A DNA stretch of 64,000 nt from Macrostomum lignano. Taxonomy: Eukaryota. The DNA lies in contig NIVC01000271.1 in NCBI GenBank assembly GCA_002269645.1, positions 186,001 to 250,000 on the forward strand, in the 5' to 3' direction. The notes under the pieces were generated by a model, which saw nothing but the letters and a program-made list of their open reading frames with translations, did not search any database and was not told the origin of the DNA. The position numbers were made by a program, and so were the translations under genes. The stretch's first letter is position 1. Each line of letters starts with the position of its first letter. Positions 41,012-53,000 of this stretch are shown here, piece by piece.

Positions 41012-44000
41012 ATGCAACAAGACGACTCGAGCCACGCTTTCCAGTTCGGCGGTGTACAGCTGACGCTGCCGACGCCCACCCTGTCGAAGGTGTCCAGGTG
41101 AGCGGCTCTCGGATTTAGCAGACGTTCTGACCGTTCTGGTTTCTGCTGAAGTCTTGTGTGGGTTGCCAGCCTCCCAGATCCTCAGTTTATGGGCCAGCCT
41201 CCCAGAGTGTCAGTTGCTGGGCCAGCCTCCCAGATCCTCAGTTGCTGGGCCAGCTTCCCAGATCCTCAGTTGCTGGGCTAGCCTCCCAGATCCTCAGTTG
41301 CTAGGCTAGCCTCCCAGATCCTCAGTTGCTGGGCCAGCCTCCCAGATCCTCAGTTGCTAGGCCAGCCTCCCAGAGTGTCAGTTGCTGGGCCAGCCTCCCA
41401 GATCCTCAGTTGCTGGGCCAGCCTCTCAGATCCTCAGTTGCTGGGCCAGCCTCCCAGATCCTCAGTTGCTGGGCCAGCCTCCCAGATCCTCAGTTGCTGG
41501 GCCAACCTTTCAGATCCTCAGTTGCTGGGCCAGCCTCCCAGATCCTCATTTCTTGGCCTTGCAGCATTATTTCGTGTGCTAGTATCATGTTATTTGACGT
41601 ATTTCAACGCATGACTCAGCTCCCGTACTAGGATAGGATAATTACTTTACCAAGTTCAGAAACAGGAAATATACGTTATCCCCAGTTTTTACAAGCGTGC
41701 ATAAAAAGTTCGCAAAGAACTTTAACCTAAACACATATAATATCGACTGTTTGTCTGCAGTCTACTAAACATTGCGGAGATTTACTATAACTTGTACAAG
41801 CTAAGTTATATACATATACATGCACATGCTGATATAGTCAGTTTCTGCTATTACTGTTGCATGCACTTTATTGCCCGGCTGAATCAGTGAATGTGCAGTG
41901 TAGTAAAATAAAATCCACGCCTTCTTTCCTGCAAAGGATATAGCTAATGGGATGGCATGAGTCAGGCGGGGATAGGGAGCGTCTGCAAGGTGCGCAGTCT
42001 GACATACATAGCGGTGCATAAGATACGACAAGAAGGGTAACGGATATTTTTCTCTGAACAGTAGCAGCGAAAAAATATTGTTTAGATTTCGTAATCTATT
42101 GCAAATATTTTTGTCCGCTTCTGTTTTGTTTCTATTTGATAGAGAAAATATGGATATTGGATGAATAAGTTATCGCATCAAGGAGACAGAAAAAAGGATT
42201 AAAAACAGGAAATATATAGAATTGGGATCGAATGAGGTAAAGATACAGGTAGAGATAGAGAGGTAGATATAGAATGGGATTACGGTAGAGACGTAGATAT
42301 AGGATGAAATAGAAATACAGACGTAGAGATAGAGATAGTGGGGTAGAGATAGAATATGATAGAGATAGATGTAGAGATAGAATAGGATAGAGATATAGGG
42401 GTAGAGATAGAATGGGATAGAGGTAGAGGGGTAGAGAGAGAGAGAGAGAGAGAGAGAGAGAGAGAGAGAGAGAGAGAGAGAGAGAGAGAGAGAGAGAGAG
42501 AGAGAGAGAGAGAGAGAGAGAGAGAGAGAGAGAGAGAGAGAGAGGATACAATGCTTCCCTAAATCACGCATCCCATATATATCCCCGTGTCCCTCGTCAG
42601 CACTATGCCCGGCTACTATCGAATGAACACGCAGTCGCGCATCATGCACAGCCGTGAGACTCAGCTGACTCACCTGTGCCGATTGGACATCGATAATTTG
42701 CCAATTTATCCTCGCGTCACCAGCATCATGTGCACGCTGGGTGAGTCTATATCAGTGTTGAGAAATGAATAATATGATTTCAGGGAAATCAATAGGGTGT
42801 CTGCTAAATCAATAGGGTGTCTGGTAAATGAAGAGGATGTCTGGTAAAGGAATAGGGTGTCTGGTAAATCAATAGGGTGTCTGGTAAATCAAAAGGTTGT
42901 CTGGTAAATGAAGAGGATGTTTGGTAAATCAATAGGGTGTCTGGTAAAGGAATAGGGTGTCTGGGAAACGAACAGGGTGTCAGGTAAATTAATAGGATGT
43001 CAGGGAATAGGAGAGGGTACGTCAGGGAAACGAATGAGGTGTCAGGTAATGGAAGAGGGTGTCAGGAAAATAAATATTGTGTCAGCGAACTTTTAATCTA
43101 TATAATCTACTGAGCAACCAATCCGCATTTACTAAATGTCTAAGATAAAGTCTATAGTATCTGACTGTACTCGTTTTAGACTAGCAAAGTTAACAATAAA
43201 TGTTCTACATTTTCTATTTCCTATGCTAACAGAAATTCTATATTCGATATAAAATATTTACTAATATCATTTTTTGACGAACGATTTCTAATCGTGCTTG
43301 TGAATGTATTTTTTCAATGCTTTCTATTATATTGTCAGAATCGATTTATTAAGATTATAATACTTGATATATATATATCGCCGGCTTGGAGGTTGCACTG
43401 CTGTGCTAGAATGGAAAAGGGATCGGTAACCGCCCTTGTAGGCCAACTTTTGGGTGAAATGATAATACGTACGCTCTTGCACGCTTGCGTTTCCCATCTT
43501 CGTTCAGTCCCTTAATTTATCCCCAACTGCATTCTTCCCAATGTTGCGGGCGGAAAGACTGGGGAGCAAAATCCCGGCACAGTTCCAGTTCGGTTTCTGA
43601 ATTTTTTTTCTGGCCGGCTTCCAAACTTTCTATAGGTTTTCCTACTATATTCAGGCTGGTTATTTTTAACTCCCGTATGCTACTTACTATGCTACTTGAT
43701 CAGCCATGATTCAGTAGTATGTCGAGATATTTTTATCCGATCTATATGTGAATTTATTTTCTTATTCGTTTTAAGGACCGTCTTGCGAAACGCCTGAAAT
43801 GATTCGTCGTATGATTGTGCGGGGTATGAATATTGCCCGCATTAACCTGACGCTCGGCTCCTACAAGGTGAGCTCTGGGGGTGATTCTGGATTACCTGTC
43901 CTAATGTCCTGATGTAGTGATCTGATGATTAAGTCTAGAGTGACTCGATGGTTACCTATAACCTATATAGTGACCTAAATGGTTACTTATAGAGTGACCT

Positions 44001-50000: not shown

Positions 50001-53000
50001 ATAGCGCTCTCTTGCGGTTACGAGCAAGTTGTTATATAATAGCTTATCATGTTCTTTTTGGTCTCTTTACTCTCGTATATTTTCGAGCGCCAATTTTCCT
50101 TTAGTGAACTCCTTTTTAGAGTCTTTTCTTACCTCACCCAACATCCCACAACTGAGATTGGGATTCCCCGCCAAACATTACAATCGCACAATGTGCATAC
50201 GTCTCTAATATAAGTGCCCCGCCCACCCCGCCTAGCATCACCCACCCCACAATGTACATTCCCCGCCTAGCATCACCCACCCCACAATGTACATTCCCCG
50301 CCTAGCATCACCCACCTCACCATCTACATTCCCCGCCTAGCATCACCCACCCCACAATGTACATTCCCCGCCTAGCATCACCCACCTCACCATGTACATT
50401 CCCCGCCTAGCATCACCCACCTCACCATGTACATTCCCCGCCTAGCATCACCCACCTCACCATGTACATTCCCCGCCTAGCATCACCCACCTCACCATGT
50501 ACATTCCCCGCCTAGCATCACCCACCCCACAGTGTACATTACCCGCCTAGCATCACCCACCCCACAATGTATATTCCCCGCCTAGCATCACCATGAAGTA
50601 CATTCCCCACCAAATTATTTGAATCTCCACAGGTGGACATTGTCTGCTGCGGCTTCGCAGAGTCGGGACTGGCCATCACTCAAATTCGAAAAGTGCTGGG
50701 CCCCTTCTCGCTGAACACGAAAGTTCTGGCTCGCATCGAGTCTTCGGACGGCTTGAAGAAGTGAGATACTGGGTGTTTTAGTTACAAGAAAACTAAAAGT
50801 ACATAATATGATTATTGCTCAATGGAATTTTAGATTCGTCAAACTTAAATCACCGCTTAATGCGGCAGTTTTTTAAATCTGAAATGACACATTTTCCTTT
50901 AAAATGGCTTCTCGCCCTTCGAAAATGGCACTTCTGTTTCAAAAATGGCACCTCTTCTTAAAAAATGGCACCCCTTTCTTCAACAATGGCAACTCTTTTT
51001 TTCGAAAATGGCATCTCTTACAAAAAATAGAACCTCTCTTTAAAAAATGGCACCCCTTCAAAAAATGGCAACTCTTCCTTCGAAAATGGCATCTCCTTCA
51101 AATATGGCACCTCTTTATTAAAAATGGCACCTCTCCCTTCAAATATGGCACCTCTCTTTTTAAAAATGGCACCTCTCTTTTTAAAAATGGCACCTCTCTT
51201 TTCAAAAATGGCACCTCTTCCTTCAAAAATGGCAACTCTTCCTTCAAAAATGGCATCTCCTTCAAATATGGCACCTCTCTTTTTAAAAATGGCACCTCTC
51301 TTTTCAAAAATGGCACCTCTCCCTTCAAAAATGGCAACTCTTCCTTCGAAAATGGCATCTCCTTCAAATATGGCACCTCTCTATTAAAAATGGCACGTGT
51401 CCCTTCAAAGATGACACCTCTACTTTAAAATGGCACCTCTCCCTTCAAAAGTAGCAACTCATCCTTTGAAACTGGCAAGTCTCCCTTCAAAAATGGCAAC
51501 TCTTTATTAAAAATGGCACGTGTCCCTTCAAAGATGACACCTCTACTTTAAAATGGCACCTCTCCCTTCGAAAGCAGCAACTCATCCTTTGAAACTGGCA
51601 AGTCTCCCTTCAAAAATGGCAACTCTTCCTTCGAAAATGACACCTCTCTTTCAAAAATGGTAGTACGGTACTTTGTGAACAACAGCTAACTGAAAGTACT
51701 TTCAAAGCAGAGAGTCTCATTTTCAAGAATAGACAAAAATGGCAATCTTCAGTTTGAACATGATGGCGTCAGTCCTTCACTCTATATATAGTTTAGCCCT
51801 CATTCCTAATCTGTGATGCAGCTAGACCCAGCAGCCTCTTCTACCATTGGCTGACAGAGAAAGGCAGGAATAGAAGATCTGAAAGGAATGCACGGGGGGT
51901 AACGTTATATAATAAATCCCTAACTGACATTTATCCCCTCGCCCCATCAGCCTCGCCGATATTCTATCCGTAGCCGACGGAGTGTTTGTAGACCGCGGCG
52001 AGCTCGGCCGCAACCTGCCAATTGAGAAAGTATTCCTAGCCCAGAAATCCGTCATTGCGCACGCCAATGCGGCCAAAAAGCCTGCAGTGGTTGCCGCCCA
52101 AATGTTGGACTCGATGCGGCATAAGCCGCGCGCCACCCGCGCCGAAGTCTCCGACGTAGCGAACGCTGTGCTTGACGGCGCGGACGTGTTGGCACTCGGC
52201 GTGGAGACCGCCAAAGGCGCTTTTCCATTGGAGACTCTGCAGGTCATGGTTCAGGTGAGCGTGTAATTAATTGTGCTGCTTTCTGTCCGAGACTAATTTG
52301 TCGCTGTGTCGGTTATCTATGTGTCGCTTTGATGTGTCGGTGGTCTATGTGTCGCTTTGATGTGTCGGTGCTCTATGTGTCAGTCTAATATGTCGATGAT
52401 CTTTGTGTCCCTCTCATGTGTCGGTGGTCTTTGTGTCGCTTTGACGTGTCGGTGCTCTATGTGTCGCTTTGATGTGTCGGTGATCTATGTGTCGCTCTAG
52501 TCTATTGTGTCGGTGATCCGTGTCGCTCTATGTGTGTCGTCGATCTGTGTCGCTCTGGTGTGTCGGTGATCTATGTGTCGCTCTAATGTGTCGGTGATCT
52601 GTGTCACTCTAATATGGTGGTCTATTGAATCGAATTATCACCTTTTGTGGGTGGTCAGTACGTCGTCAATGTTGACAATTTATGTTGTGATGATTATGTG
52701 TCGGAGGTCGATGTATATCAGACTAGCTGTGTTAGATTATACAAGGCTGGATCCAAATATGCAGGTGTATACTTTTCTACTTTACTTCTACAGTATATGC
52801 AATACATATTTTTACGTAACTATATATAGTCTTGGTAATTCTGAATCAGCATCAATTATTTTGGCCAATCAGCTAGGCAGGGCTGCTGCATGATGAAGCA
52901 TTCTGACCACGCTCTCTCCTTTGCAATTTCCCGGCCTCTTCTTCCGTAGCATTTTTATCATCGGGAGAAAGTAATCATTTCTGCGGGTTCGCAATAGTAA

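What the first reader, a model, noticed from the sequence alone, without database searches (positions are those of the whole stretch)
42601..52254. Pseudo-pyruvate kinase: intact gene, dismantled active site
Seen versus human PKM numbering (established roles, aligned by eye): NFSHG to NLTLG (H78L); DTKGPE to DITAPT (T114I, K115T, E118T); KKGVN to SRVVR; ASF to CGF (S243G); catalytic K270R; ARGD to DRGE (A293D, metal ligand D296E); ATQM to AAQM (T328A, proton-relay Thr); LSGET to LGVET (S362G, G363V). Yet the frame is open over nine introns with good splice sites, and the scaffold and interface motifs ([13 protein letters not shown]-like [20 protein letters not shown]) are strongly conserved. 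Inference: a non-catalytic PK retained for a structural, regulatory (dominant-negative heterotetramer subunit) or moonlighting role.
Basis: partly seen in the sequence, partly recalled or inferred. Interest (0 to 1): 0.8.

Follow-up and report, generated by a model that had tools for sequence, protein, structure and literature searches.

The report
Flatworm pyruvate-kinase-like pseudoenzyme gene
This is an intact eight-exon gene of the flatworm Macrostomum lignano for a pyruvate-kinase-shaped protein with a partly dismantled active site. It belongs to an old, selectively maintained lineage of such proteins that parasitic flukes, tapeworms and monogeneans also carry, so it is probably a working non-catalytic relative of a glycolytic enzyme and not a dead gene.

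Summary
Window 42605-55520 (+) encodes a 593-aa protein with both pyruvate kinase (PK) domains (Pfam 1.9e-88 and 8e-31) and about 42% identity to human PKM2. It carries H78L, K115T, G116A, E118T, G208V, N210R, S243G, K270R, D296E, T328A, S362G and G363V.

Two details were wrong. The gene has 7 introns, not 9. It ends at 55520, not 52254.

The window is Macrostomum lignano (99.5% identical to assembly Mlig_3_7).

The nearest relatives found are PK-likes of Paragonimus, Cichlidogyrus and Schistocephalus, all with degenerate active sites. Together they form a clade:
- neighbour-joining bootstrap 200/200
- a shared 3-residue B-domain insertion
- a shared C-terminal extension

Within the clade the phosphate, K+ and Mg2+ ligands (R73, N75, D113, R120, E272) and the effector pocket stay fixed. 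T328, D296, G295 and S362 differ from lineage to lineage. The Paragonimus orthologue pair has dN/dS = 0.054.

Best reading: an ancient flatworm pseudo-PK, kept by selection, that still binds ligands and oligomerises but is catalytically dead or crippled. Loss of activity, expression in M. lignano and a canonical PK in that genome were not testable here. Predicted PK pseudoenzymes are already known in Drosophila, so this is a new member of a known kind.

The parts
42605..42740 (+). Exon 1 (ATG at 42605; aa 1-45, phase-1 end). Encodes the N-terminal '[10 protein letters not shown]' helix-turn of PK.
   Evidence: tblastn with PKM2; model and GT donor gtgagt; N-terminus aligns with the Paragonimus and Cichlidogyrus PK-likes.
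43776..43867 (+). Exon 2 (aa 46-76). Holds ARINLTLG at 43844-43858. R73 and N75 are kept; S77T and H78L are changed.
44646..44973 (+). Exon 3 (aa 77-185), most of the B domain. [10 protein letters not shown] lies at 44736-44765: D113 and R120 are kept; T114I, K115T, G116A and E118T are changed. The clade-specific 3-residue insertion (DTAYWRKSF) lies at 44877-44903.
45975..46123 (+). Exon 4 (aa 186-235). SSRVVRLPR lies at 46028-46054 (K206S, K207R, G208V, N210R). D225Y is also here.
50633..50760 (+). Exon 5 (aa 236-277). CCGF (S243G) lies at 50645-50656. ARIES lies at 50729-50743: K270R is changed and the Mg ligand E272 is kept.
51951..52254 (+). Exon 6 (aa 278-379), the most conserved exon.
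- DRGELG at 51991-52008 (A293D, D296E)
- VAAQML at 52090-52107 (T328A)
- [20 protein letters not shown] at 52126-52185
- LGVETAKG at 52195-52218 (S362G, G363V; E364 and K367 kept)
54333..54645 (+). Encodes the first part of the C domain, including the effector-loop equivalent TTTGKT (54513-54530) and ARQCHLYRG.
55189..55520 (+). Encodes the rest of the C domain (W482 and R489 equivalents) and a 56-residue C-terminal extension (55350-55517) ending ...[12 protein letters not shown].
   Evidence: The acceptor was chosen by phase and by homology: [12 protein letters not shown] matches Gigantopelta EEKCDDWAEDID with no length change. The extension is shared with the flatworm clade.
42741..55188 (+). 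Seven GT-AG introns: 42741-43775, 43868-44645, 44974-45974, 46124-50632, 50761-51950, 52255-54332, 54646-55188. GC is 0.36-0.46 against 0.57 for the CDS (GC3 0.68). Six of the seven (all but intron 3) hold tandem-repeat arrays with units of 6-62 bp.

Best explanation
WHAT IT IS. Window 42605-55520 (+) is the Macrostomum lignano member of an ancient, flatworm-wide lineage of pyruvate-kinase-like proteins. This lineage is a sister paralogue of the glycolytic PK.

WHAT IS KEPT:
- the complete three-domain PK fold
- the residues that hold a phosphate group and the K+ and Mg2+ ions (R73, N75, D113, R120, E272)
- the C-domain effector (sugar-phosphate) pocket
- the core A-A interface residues (K311, R342, L353, D354)

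WHAT IS LOST:
- residues that contact the nucleotide and close the site (H78, K115/G116/E118, G208, N210, G363)
- the proton-relay residues (T328, S362)
- in this species also the exact geometry of the catalytic Lys and of one metal ligand (K270R, D296E)

HOW IT MOST LIKELY WORKS. The protein no longer turns over PEP + ADP at a useful rate. It still oligomerises and still binds a phosphorylated ligand and/or effector. It would then act as a non-catalytic regulatory or sensor subunit, either alone or mixed with the canonical PK.

SHOWN: gene integrity, clade membership, the pattern of kept and lost residues, and purifying selection in the clade.

INFERRED: loss of activity, ligand binding, oligomerisation and the regulatory role.
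For: GENE INTEGRITY
- 593 codons are open across 8 exons, with 7 consensus GT-AG introns. The other two frames of the CDS carry 21-22 stops.
- GC3 is 0.68 against intron GC of 0.36-0.46.
- Homology runs from residue ~4 to the last residue in relatives.

FAMILY AND FOLD
- Pfam PK E=1.9e-88 and PK_C E=8.1e-31; 400-434 bits to solved PKs.
- An AlphaFold model of the Paragonimus orthologue has pLDDT 86 and superposes on PKM1/M2 with TM 0.92-0.94.

SPECIES
- Window 12654-16908 is 99.46% identical to NIVC01003479.1 of GCA_002269645.1, which is M. lignano Mlig_3_7.

CLADE
- The best full-length matches among 150 representatives are Paragonimus westermani KAF8564031 (44%), Cichlidogyrus casuarinus KAL3309388 (40%) and Schistocephalus solidus VDL96706. 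All have degenerate catalytic motifs.
- Neighbour-joining bootstrap is 200/200 for the four flatworm taxa and 198/200 for Neodermata. The topology mirrors the species tree.
- A B-domain segment is 22 residues long in all clade members. It is 19 residues in 59 of the 71 sequences in the alignment, which also counts the clade's own members.
- The C-terminal extension of 16-56 residues is shared.

PATTERN OF KEPT AND LOST SITES
- Of 58 near-universal PK columns, 10 to 16 are changed in clade members, against a mean of 0.92 in canonical PKs.
- T328 is A/H/G/S, D296 is E/T/D/G, G295 is G/G/A/Q and S362 is G/G/S/T across the four lineages.
- R73, N75, D113 and R120 are invariant. So are E272 where present, K311, R342, L353, D354, T432, G435, W482 and R489. 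Residue 436 is R or K.

SELECTION
- P. westermani against P. heterotremus: dN 0.014, dS 0.259, dN/dS 0.054 over 567 codons.
- The degenerate motifs are identical in three Paragonimus species.

LITERATURE
- Neodermatan PKs split into two clades, with two genes per Paragonimus species. P879_08808, the same protein as KAF8564031, is in that dataset. A Clade I enzyme is active in vitro (PMC12510601).
- PKM2 K270M lacks basal activity (PMC6586363).
- Drosophila has divergent, testis-restricted PK paralogues (CG7069 is named Pykl1). The same survey predicts that most such non-canonical paralogues encode pseudoenzymes (PMC11836677, PMC10755183).
Against: - No activity measurement exists for any member of the clade.
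- In M. lignano itself the two most critical changes are conservative (K270R, D296E). K207R, S77T and all other phosphate and metal ligands are compatible with residual or altered catalysis.
- From memory, not checked here: mutating the yeast equivalent of T328 lowers activity but does not abolish it.
- A closer single-exon relative from an unidentified sample (DRR639055, 64% identity in exon 6) keeps D296 and T328. Part of the degeneration is therefore lineage-specific and possibly recent.
- Purifying selection was measured in Paragonimus, not in Macrostomum.
- I found no expression evidence for this gene. It is absent from the protein collection, and three M. lignano papers' supplements had no PK entries.
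- A canonical PK in M. lignano was not demonstrated.
- Long-branch attraction could inflate the neighbour-joining support, although the shared indels argue against that.
Confidence: 0.6

Rival explanations
1. It is still an enzyme: a PK with a remodelled active site. It would be slow, use a different nucleotide or cation, or act on a different phospho-substrate. It would not be a pseudoenzyme.
For: - R73, N75, D113, R120, E272, R294, E364 and K367 are all kept.
- K270R, D296E, K207R and S77T preserve charge or chemistry.
- Strict retention of the phosphate and cation ligands across the whole clade is what continued substrate binding would predict.
- Strong purifying selection fits an enzyme just as well.
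Against: - T328 is lost in all four full-length flatworm-clade members and replaced by four different residues.
- D296 is T or G, and G295 is A or Q, in orthologues. The canonical catalytic geometry is therefore not what selection preserves.
- H78, G116, G208, N210 and G363 are changed throughout the clade.
- These positions are at least 93% invariant in 61 canonical PKs from very diverse organisms.
- K270M abolishes basal PKM2 activity (PMC6586363).
Confidence: 0.2
2. It is a decaying pseudogene, or a young duplicate evolving neutrally, whose frame happens still to be open.
For: - There are many substitutions at otherwise invariant sites.
- No transcript or protein of this gene is in the searched collections.
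- The introns are swollen by minisatellites.
Against: - 593 codons carry no stop, while the alternative frames carry 21-22.
- All 14 splice sites are canonical.
- 48 of 58 universal PK columns are intact.
- Orthologues exist in Monogenea, Cestoda and Trematoda with shared indels.
- dN/dS is 0.054 in the clade.
- GC3 of 0.68 resembles the neighbouring genes, at 0.58-0.64.
Confidence: 0.03
3. It is the only PK of M. lignano and carries the glycolytic flux despite its odd residues. On this view the canonical paralogue was lost in Macrostomorpha.
For: I could not search the M. lignano genome for a second PK. None lies in this window.
Against: - The gene groups with the divergent neodermatan lineage and not with canonical PKs.
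- Neodermatans carry both lineages (PMC12510601), so the duplication predates the Macrostomum-Neodermata split. The ancestor therefore had a canonical copy.
- Losing the proton-relay Thr and changing the catalytic Lys in a sole glycolytic PK would be unprecedented among the 61 canonical sequences examined.
Confidence: 0.05

Closest known systems
Divergent PK lineage of parasitic flatworms, very probably 'Clade II' of PMC12510601. Examples: Paragonimus westermani P879_08808/KAF8564031, Cichlidogyrus casuarinus KAL3309388, Schistocephalus solidus VDL96706.
   Same: - 40-45% identity over the full length
- the same 3-residue B-domain insertion and the same kind of C-terminal extension
- the same losses at H78, K115, G116 and G363, and loss of T328
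- the same retained R73, N75, D113, R120 and effector pocket
- neighbour-joining bootstrap 200/200
- at least four approximately shared intron positions with Paragonimus
   Different: - Only the Macrostomum protein has K270R and D296E. The parasites keep K270 but have T, D or G at 296 and A or Q at 295.
- Macrostomum lacks two residues of the 517-520 loop and has the longest tail, 56 aa.
- The published phylogeny treats these proteins simply as PKs and does not discuss loss of catalytic residues. I could not see its figure to confirm which clade P879_08808 falls in.
Drosophila melanogaster non-canonical PK paralogues (CG7069/Pykl1, CG2964, CG7362, CG11249, CG12229)
   Same: They are divergent PK paralogues that sit beside one canonical Pyk. 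CG7069 is expressed mainly in adult testis. The survey that named Pykl1 predicts that most non-canonical carbohydrate-enzyme paralogues of the fly are catalytically inactive because critical residues are lost, and suggests regulatory roles (PMC11836677, PMC10755183).
   Different: - They are independent, insect-specific duplications, not orthologues.
- I did not see the table entries, so I cannot say which fly PK paralogues are scored inactive.
- No tissue data exist here for the flatworm gene.
Canonical animal pyruvate kinase (human PKM2/PKLR; the chain of PDB 6du6)
   Same: - the same two Pfam domains
- about 42% identity to PKM2
- the same N/A/B/C domain order
- conserved effector pocket and A-A interface residues
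- the orthologue model superposes with TM 0.92-0.94
   Different: Ten of 58 near-universal columns are changed, including the catalytic Lys, one Mg ligand and the proton-relay Thr and Ser. There is also a B-domain insertion and a C-terminal extension.
Catalytically dead paralogues that regulate their active partner: trypanosomatid AdoMetDC 'prozyme' and the DHS paralogue
   Same: They are the conceptual model for the proposed mechanism. A dead paralogue that keeps the fold and the oligomer interface forms a hetero-oligomer and controls the active subunit (abstracts of PMC5201418 and PMC3663545, listed).
   Different: They belong to different enzyme families and different organisms. Hetero-oligomerisation of the flatworm PK-like with canonical PK is purely hypothetical.

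Membership tests
Pyruvate kinase family (Pfam PF00224 + PF02887) | Both the PK barrel (with inserted B domain) and the PK_C alpha/beta domain score above the curated cut-offs. | tested here: met
   PF00224 scores 297 bits (cut-off 30) over residues 37-373. PF02887 scores 107 bits (cut-off 28) over residues 421-533.
Catalytically competent pyruvate kinase (EC 2.7.1.40) | The catalytic Lys (K270) is present. | tested here: not met
   Arg is at the aligned position (ARIES, 50729-50743). K270M is inactive in PKM2 (PMC6586363). The effect of K>R itself is not known to me.
Catalytically competent pyruvate kinase (EC 2.7.1.40) | The two Mg2+ ligands are E272 and D296, within the RGDLG motif. | tested here: inconclusive
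   E272 is kept. D296 is Glu (DRGELG). This is conservative, so metal binding may survive. Orthologues have T, D or G here.
Catalytically competent pyruvate kinase (EC 2.7.1.40) | Proton-relay residues T328 and S362, together with E364. | tested here: not met
   T328A and S362G; E364 is kept. The assignment of these residues to the relay rests on my knowledge of rabbit and yeast PK enzymology.
Catalytically competent pyruvate kinase (EC 2.7.1.40) | K+ site and phosphate-binding residues (N75, S77, D113, T114 backbone, R73, R120). | tested here: met
   N, T, D, I (a backbone ligand), R and R respectively.
Catalytically competent pyruvate kinase (EC 2.7.1.40) | Measured PEP + ADP to pyruvate + ATP activity. 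| not testable with these tools
   This needs recombinant protein and an LDH-coupled assay.
Flatworm PK-like clade (Paragonimus / Cichlidogyrus / Schistocephalus type) | Groups with these sequences to the exclusion of canonical PKs. | tested here: met
   Neighbour-joining bootstrap 200/200 on 480 trimmed columns and 71 sequences. Caveats: distance method only, and no canonical flatworm PK was in the set.
Flatworm PK-like clade (Paragonimus / Cichlidogyrus / Schistocephalus type) | Shared rare changes: a 3-residue B-domain insertion, a C-terminal extension beyond the PK end, H78 lost, G116A, G363V. | tested here: met
   The segment is 22 residues in all clade members and 19 in 59 of the 71 aligned sequences. 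Extensions are 16-56 residues. Motifs.
Pseudoenzyme (operational definition: enzyme fold, key catalytic residues lost, maintained by selection) | Purifying selection on the coding sequence. | tested here: inconclusive
   dN/dS is 0.054 for the Paragonimus orthologue pair. For the M. lignano gene itself there is only indirect evidence: an open frame, codon bias, and 48 of 58 universal columns kept. No congener or homeologue sequence was reachable.
Pseudoenzyme (operational definition: enzyme fold, key catalytic residues lost, maintained by selection) | An active canonical paralogue exists in the same genome. | not tested
   No tool here searches the M. lignano genome. Neodermatans have two PK lineages (PMC12510601).

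The most novel reading that the evidence does not exclude
Before Macrostomorpha and Neodermata diverged, flatworms converted a duplicate of pyruvate kinase into a dedicated non-catalytic metabolite sensor or regulatory subunit. It keeps the PEP-phosphate/cation half of the active site and the sugar-phosphate effector pocket. It has lost nucleotide binding and the proton relay, and it has gained a C-terminal tail next to the C-C interface. 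It has been conserved ever since, including in liver and lung flukes, tapeworms and monogeneans. That would make it a phylum-wide, previously unrecognised regulator of glycolytic flux. Because vertebrates lack it, it would also be a parasite-specific handle on energy metabolism.
Probability: 0.25. Interest if true: 0.7.

Novelty: new member of a known kind. Interest (0 to 1): 0.5.

Why it matters
Pseudoenzymes derived from glycolytic enzymes are only beginning to be catalogued. For PK the only explicit precedents I found are sequence-based predictions for testis-restricted paralogues in Drosophila.

This locus shows that flatworms carry their own, much older PK-like lineage. It is conserved from a free-living basal flatworm to three classes of parasites and is under strong constraint. 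Its decay is informative: the phosphate, cation and effector sites are kept, while the catalytic residues drift.

Macrostomum lignano can be manipulated by transgenesis and RNAi (PMC5730564, PMC11075559). It could therefore be used to find out what this family does. The answer would transfer to the orthologues in flukes and tapeworms, where PK is studied as a drug and diagnostic target and where databases and the one phylogenetic study I found currently label these proteins 'pyruvate kinase' or leave them unnamed.

The practical lesson is that metabolic reconstructions counting these genes as PK activity are probably wrong.

Tried and rejected
- Three homologous-protein runs with the full protein or large parts timed out. 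The PK family is too large for that index.
- A B-domain-only query returned nothing. The exact 593-aa model is not in the collection. This gene therefore has no record there, and no M. lignano homeologue or Macrostomum congener could be obtained for a direct dN/dS.
I searched with exon 6 alone and modelled the Paragonimus orthologue instead. Its C-terminal extension is predicted with low confidence, so the model says nothing about what the tail does.
- Supplements of three M. lignano transcriptome or genome papers held no PK entries.
- A tRNA-like stretch I thought I saw in intron 3 (about 45115-45190) is not supported by ARAGORN or Rfam.
- An alternative acceptor for exon 8 (…[12 protein letters not shown]…) was rejected. 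The phases do not fit, and homologues show no extra residues there.
- My remembered PKM2 sequence had one extra residue (I377). This was detected against the PDB chain and corrected, and C-terminal numbering uses the corrected version. The 'K207' column was in fact G208, which is corrected in the text.
- Grouping of the mollusc (Gigantopelta) PKM-like protein and an unidentified transcript (SRR22388065) with the flatworm clade has only about 50% bootstrap. I do not claim it.
- Intron positions are partly shared with Paragonimus and Cichlidogyrus. As far as I recall, at least one (human residue ~381) is also a vertebrate PKM exon boundary. They therefore support the gene model and not orthology.

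Full report
1. WHAT IS IN THE SEQUENCE

A tblastn of PKM2 against the window finds collinear + strand matches from 42632 to 55349. Reading the junctions gives eight exons: 42605-42740, 43776-43867, 44646-44973, 45975-46123, 50633-50760, 51951-52254, 54333-54645 and 55189-55520. The seven introns all have GT...AG ends, mostly with GTGAG donors and pyrimidine-rich acceptors. The frame is open for 593 codons and ends in TGA.

The other two frames of the spliced CDS hold 22 and 21 stops. CDS GC is 0.57 (GC3 0.68) against 0.36-0.46 in the introns, and neighbouring genes have GC3 of 0.58-0.64.

The whole C domain lies downstream, and there are seven introns, not nine.

Six of the seven introns (all but intron 3) carry tandem-repeat arrays with units of 6-62 bp.

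2. FAMILY AND THE CLAIMED SUBSTITUTIONS

Pfam gives PK barrel 1.9e-88 and PK_C 8.1e-31. The best solved relative is 6du6 (434 bits), and the PKM2 chains score about 400 bits.

EKVFLAQK and [20 protein letters not shown] are intact.

As an unbiased check I took 61 canonical PKs from a library search and listed the 58 alignment columns that are at least 93% conserved. The window protein differs at 10: H78L, G116A, D225Y, S243G, K270R, M291F, D296E, T328A, M360A, S362G. Canonical sequences differ at 0.92 on average, at most 7.

Not everything is dismantled. R73, N75, D113, R120, E272, R294, E364 and K367 remain.

3. WHOSE GENOME

A single-exon Mpv17-like gene in the window (19109-19741) is identical to a protein called on NIVC01003479.1 of GCA_002269645.1. 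That contig is 99.46% identical to window 12654-16908. The accession is the Mlig_3_7 assembly of Macrostomum lignano (PMC10733133).

Neighbouring genes are VPS8, the Mpv17-like gene, an MRCK-type kinase and an ankyrin-repeat gene.

4. RELATIVES

The large protein index timed out on PK queries and holds no record of this gene. An exhaustive search with exon 6 returned 150 representatives.

Re-scoring them against the full protein shows that the four best matches all have degenerate catalytic motifs. Source names identify three of them, plus a fifth, partial match:
- Paragonimus westermani KAF8564031 (Trematoda, 44%)
- Cichlidogyrus casuarinus KAL3309388 (Monogenea, 40%)
- Gigantopelta aegis 'PKM-like' (a gastropod, 41%)
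- Schistocephalus solidus VDL96706 (Cestoda, partial)

The fourth of the best matches is an unidentified transcript from run SRR22388065 (42%).

A neighbour-joining tree places the Macrostomum protein with the three neodermatan ones, in the order of the species tree. Bootstrap support is 200/200 for the clade and 198/200 for Neodermata. Attachment of the mollusc and the unidentified transcript gets only about 50%.

Two rare changes back the clade independently:
- A B-domain segment is 22 residues in every clade member and 19 in 59 of the 71 aligned sequences.
- Every member extends 16-56 residues past the normal PK C-terminus. The Macrostomum and Paragonimus tails both end in ...AW...FD.

A recent paper on cestode PKs reports that neodermatan PKs fall into two clades. 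Its dataset contains two genes per Paragonimus species, including P879_08808, which is KAF8564031. It also shows that a Clade I enzyme is active (PMC12510601). It does not discuss loss of catalytic residues.

5. WHAT SELECTION KEEPS AND WHAT IT LETS GO

Across the clade these residues are fixed:
- R73, N75, D113, P117, R120 and E272
- the whole RxTRAExxDVxNAxLDGAD block
- K311, R342, L353 and D354
- the effector-pocket residues T432, G435, R/K436, S/T437, W482 and R489

The following are changed in all members: H78, K115, G116, G208, N210, G363 and T328.

The catalytic positions differ from lineage to lineage. In the order Macrostomum, Cichlidogyrus, Schistocephalus, Paragonimus:
- T328 is A/H/G/S
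- D296 is E/T/D/G
- G295 is G/G/A/Q
- S362 is G/G/S/T

Only Macrostomum has K270R. That is the signature of relaxed constraint on catalysis inside a protein that is otherwise constrained.

The constraint can be measured in Paragonimus. Between P. westermani and P. heterotremus, dN = 0.014, dS = 0.259 and dN/dS = 0.054 over 567 codons. The degenerate motifs are identical in three Paragonimus species.

An AlphaFold model of the Paragonimus protein is confident (pLDDT 86, pTM 0.85) and superposes on PKM1/M2 at TM 0.92-0.94. Its C-terminal tail is of low confidence.

A genomic fragment from an unidentified sample (DRR639055) is the closest exon-6 relative, at 64% identity. It shares ILSV..DGV, PVVVA and TVETAKG, yet keeps D296 and T328. 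Loss of those two residues was therefore probably stepwise and lineage-specific.

6. HOW IT MOST LIKELY WORKS

Assigning roles to residues rests on established PK enzymology. R73, K270, T328 and G295/D296 bind PEP. E272 and D296 bind Mg2+. N75, S77, D113 and T114 bind K+. H78, R120 and K207 contact the nucleotide. T328, S362 and E364 form the proton relay. This is my knowledge of the rabbit, yeast and human enzymes. K270M inactivity is documented in PMC6586363.

On that basis, the half of the site that holds a phosphate and the cations is preserved. The residues needed to bind ADP, close the site and protonate enolpyruvate are gone or altered.

I therefore think the protein binds a phospho-ligand and an effector and assembles through the conserved A-A interface, but does not catalyse the PK reaction at a useful rate. 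It would act as a regulatory or sensor subunit, possibly in mixed tetramers with canonical PK. The tail follows directly on the last beta-strand, which from memory contributes to the C-C interface in PK tetramers, so it could tune assembly.

These steps are inferred, not shown. My confidence is about 0.6 that the protein is a selected, essentially non-catalytic PK-like. It is about 0.25 for the specific sensor or regulatory-subunit mechanism.

7. RIVALS

- A still-active, remodelled enzyme (about 0.2). The conservative K270R and D296E and the kept ligands favour it. The lineage-to-lineage variation at 295, 296 and 328 argues against it.
- A pseudogene (about 0.03). The open frame, the splice sites, the deep conservation and the dN/dS of the clade all contradict it.
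- The sole PK of the species (about 0.05). This is unlikely because the duplication predates the split from Neodermata, but I could not search the M. lignano genome.

8. NOVELTY

Divergent, testis-restricted PK paralogues sit beside the canonical Pyk in Drosophila. The survey that named one of them Pykl1 predicts that most such non-canonical paralogues are catalytically inactive (PMC11836677, PMC10755183). A second PK clade in parasitic flatworms has been drawn in one phylogeny (PMC12510601).

What appears to be new within the literature I could search:
- recognising that this flatworm lineage has a degenerate active site
- showing that it reaches back to free-living Macrostomorpha
- showing that it is under strong purifying selection

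I rate it a new member of a known kind, of moderate interest.

Noticed in passing
window 26781-27447, 41165-41500, 48779-49739: The same 28-bp minisatellite (GCCAGCCTCCCAGATCCTCAGTTGCTGG) forms arrays at three separate places, all in the same orientation. One lies between two coding blocks of the MRCK kinase gene, one is upstream of the PK-like gene, and one is in its intron 4. There are 61 copies with at most 2 mismatches against 0 expected.
   Followed up: partly
window 43963-44512 and 47368-48311: A second minisatellite family (23-bp unit CTATAGAGTGACCTGATGGTCAA / ...GATTA) occurs in both intron 2 and intron 4 of the PK-like gene. Six of its seven introns carry tandem arrays with units of 6-62 bp, which account for much of the gene's 12.9 kb.
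   Followed up: partly
window 55350-55517 (aa 538-593); P0106 residues 548-569: The C-terminal extensions of the Macrostomum and Paragonimus PK-likes both end with an ...AW...FD-COOH pattern ([12 protein letters not shown] against GDAWFD or GDVWFD). This may be a short conserved terminal motif. There are too few sequences to judge, and the AlphaFold model gives it low confidence.
   Followed up: partly
L005 (Logan DRR639055 contig, 981 bp), proteins P0002/P0155/P0156: A genomic fragment from an unidentified sample holds an exon with the same boundaries as exon 6. It is the closest relative of that exon, at 64% identity. It has the clade-type TVETAKG and PVVVA motifs but keeps RGDLG and ATQM. 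This suggests stepwise loss of catalytic residues within the lineage.
   Followed up: partly
proteins P0001, P0003, P0004 (top E-values): The three best-scoring library hits to exon 6 are proteins of 1050-1280 aa with two PK units in tandem. At least one unit has degenerate catalytic motifs; for example, P0001 has K270R-like ARIETQ and SRSGLA. These look like covalently fused active and degenerate PK pairs from unidentified organisms.
   Followed up: no
protein P0083 (Gigantopelta aegis XP_041355957): A gastropod 'pyruvate kinase PKM-like' protein also lacks H78, K115, E118 and T328 (NMAYGS, DLLGPRAR, AAQM, LSKET) and shares EEKCDDW with the Macrostomum protein. Whether it belongs to the flatworm lineage or is an independent pseudo-PK is unresolved, with bootstrap about 50%.
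   Followed up: partly
window 5983-17471 (+), 19109-19741 (+), 25709-31857 (+), 58047-58712 (+), 2477-3280 (-): Neighbouring genes:
- a multi-exon VPS8 (beta-propeller and TPR domains)
- a single-exon Mpv17/PMP22-like gene
- an MRCK/Gek-type kinase with one 1440-codon exon
- an ankyrin-repeat gene
- a decayed Mos1/mariner-type transposase fragment (HTH_48)
   Followed up: partly
window 42433-42544: A perfect (AG)56 microsatellite ends about 60 bp upstream of the PK-like start codon, where the 5' UTR or promoter is expected to lie.
   Followed up: no
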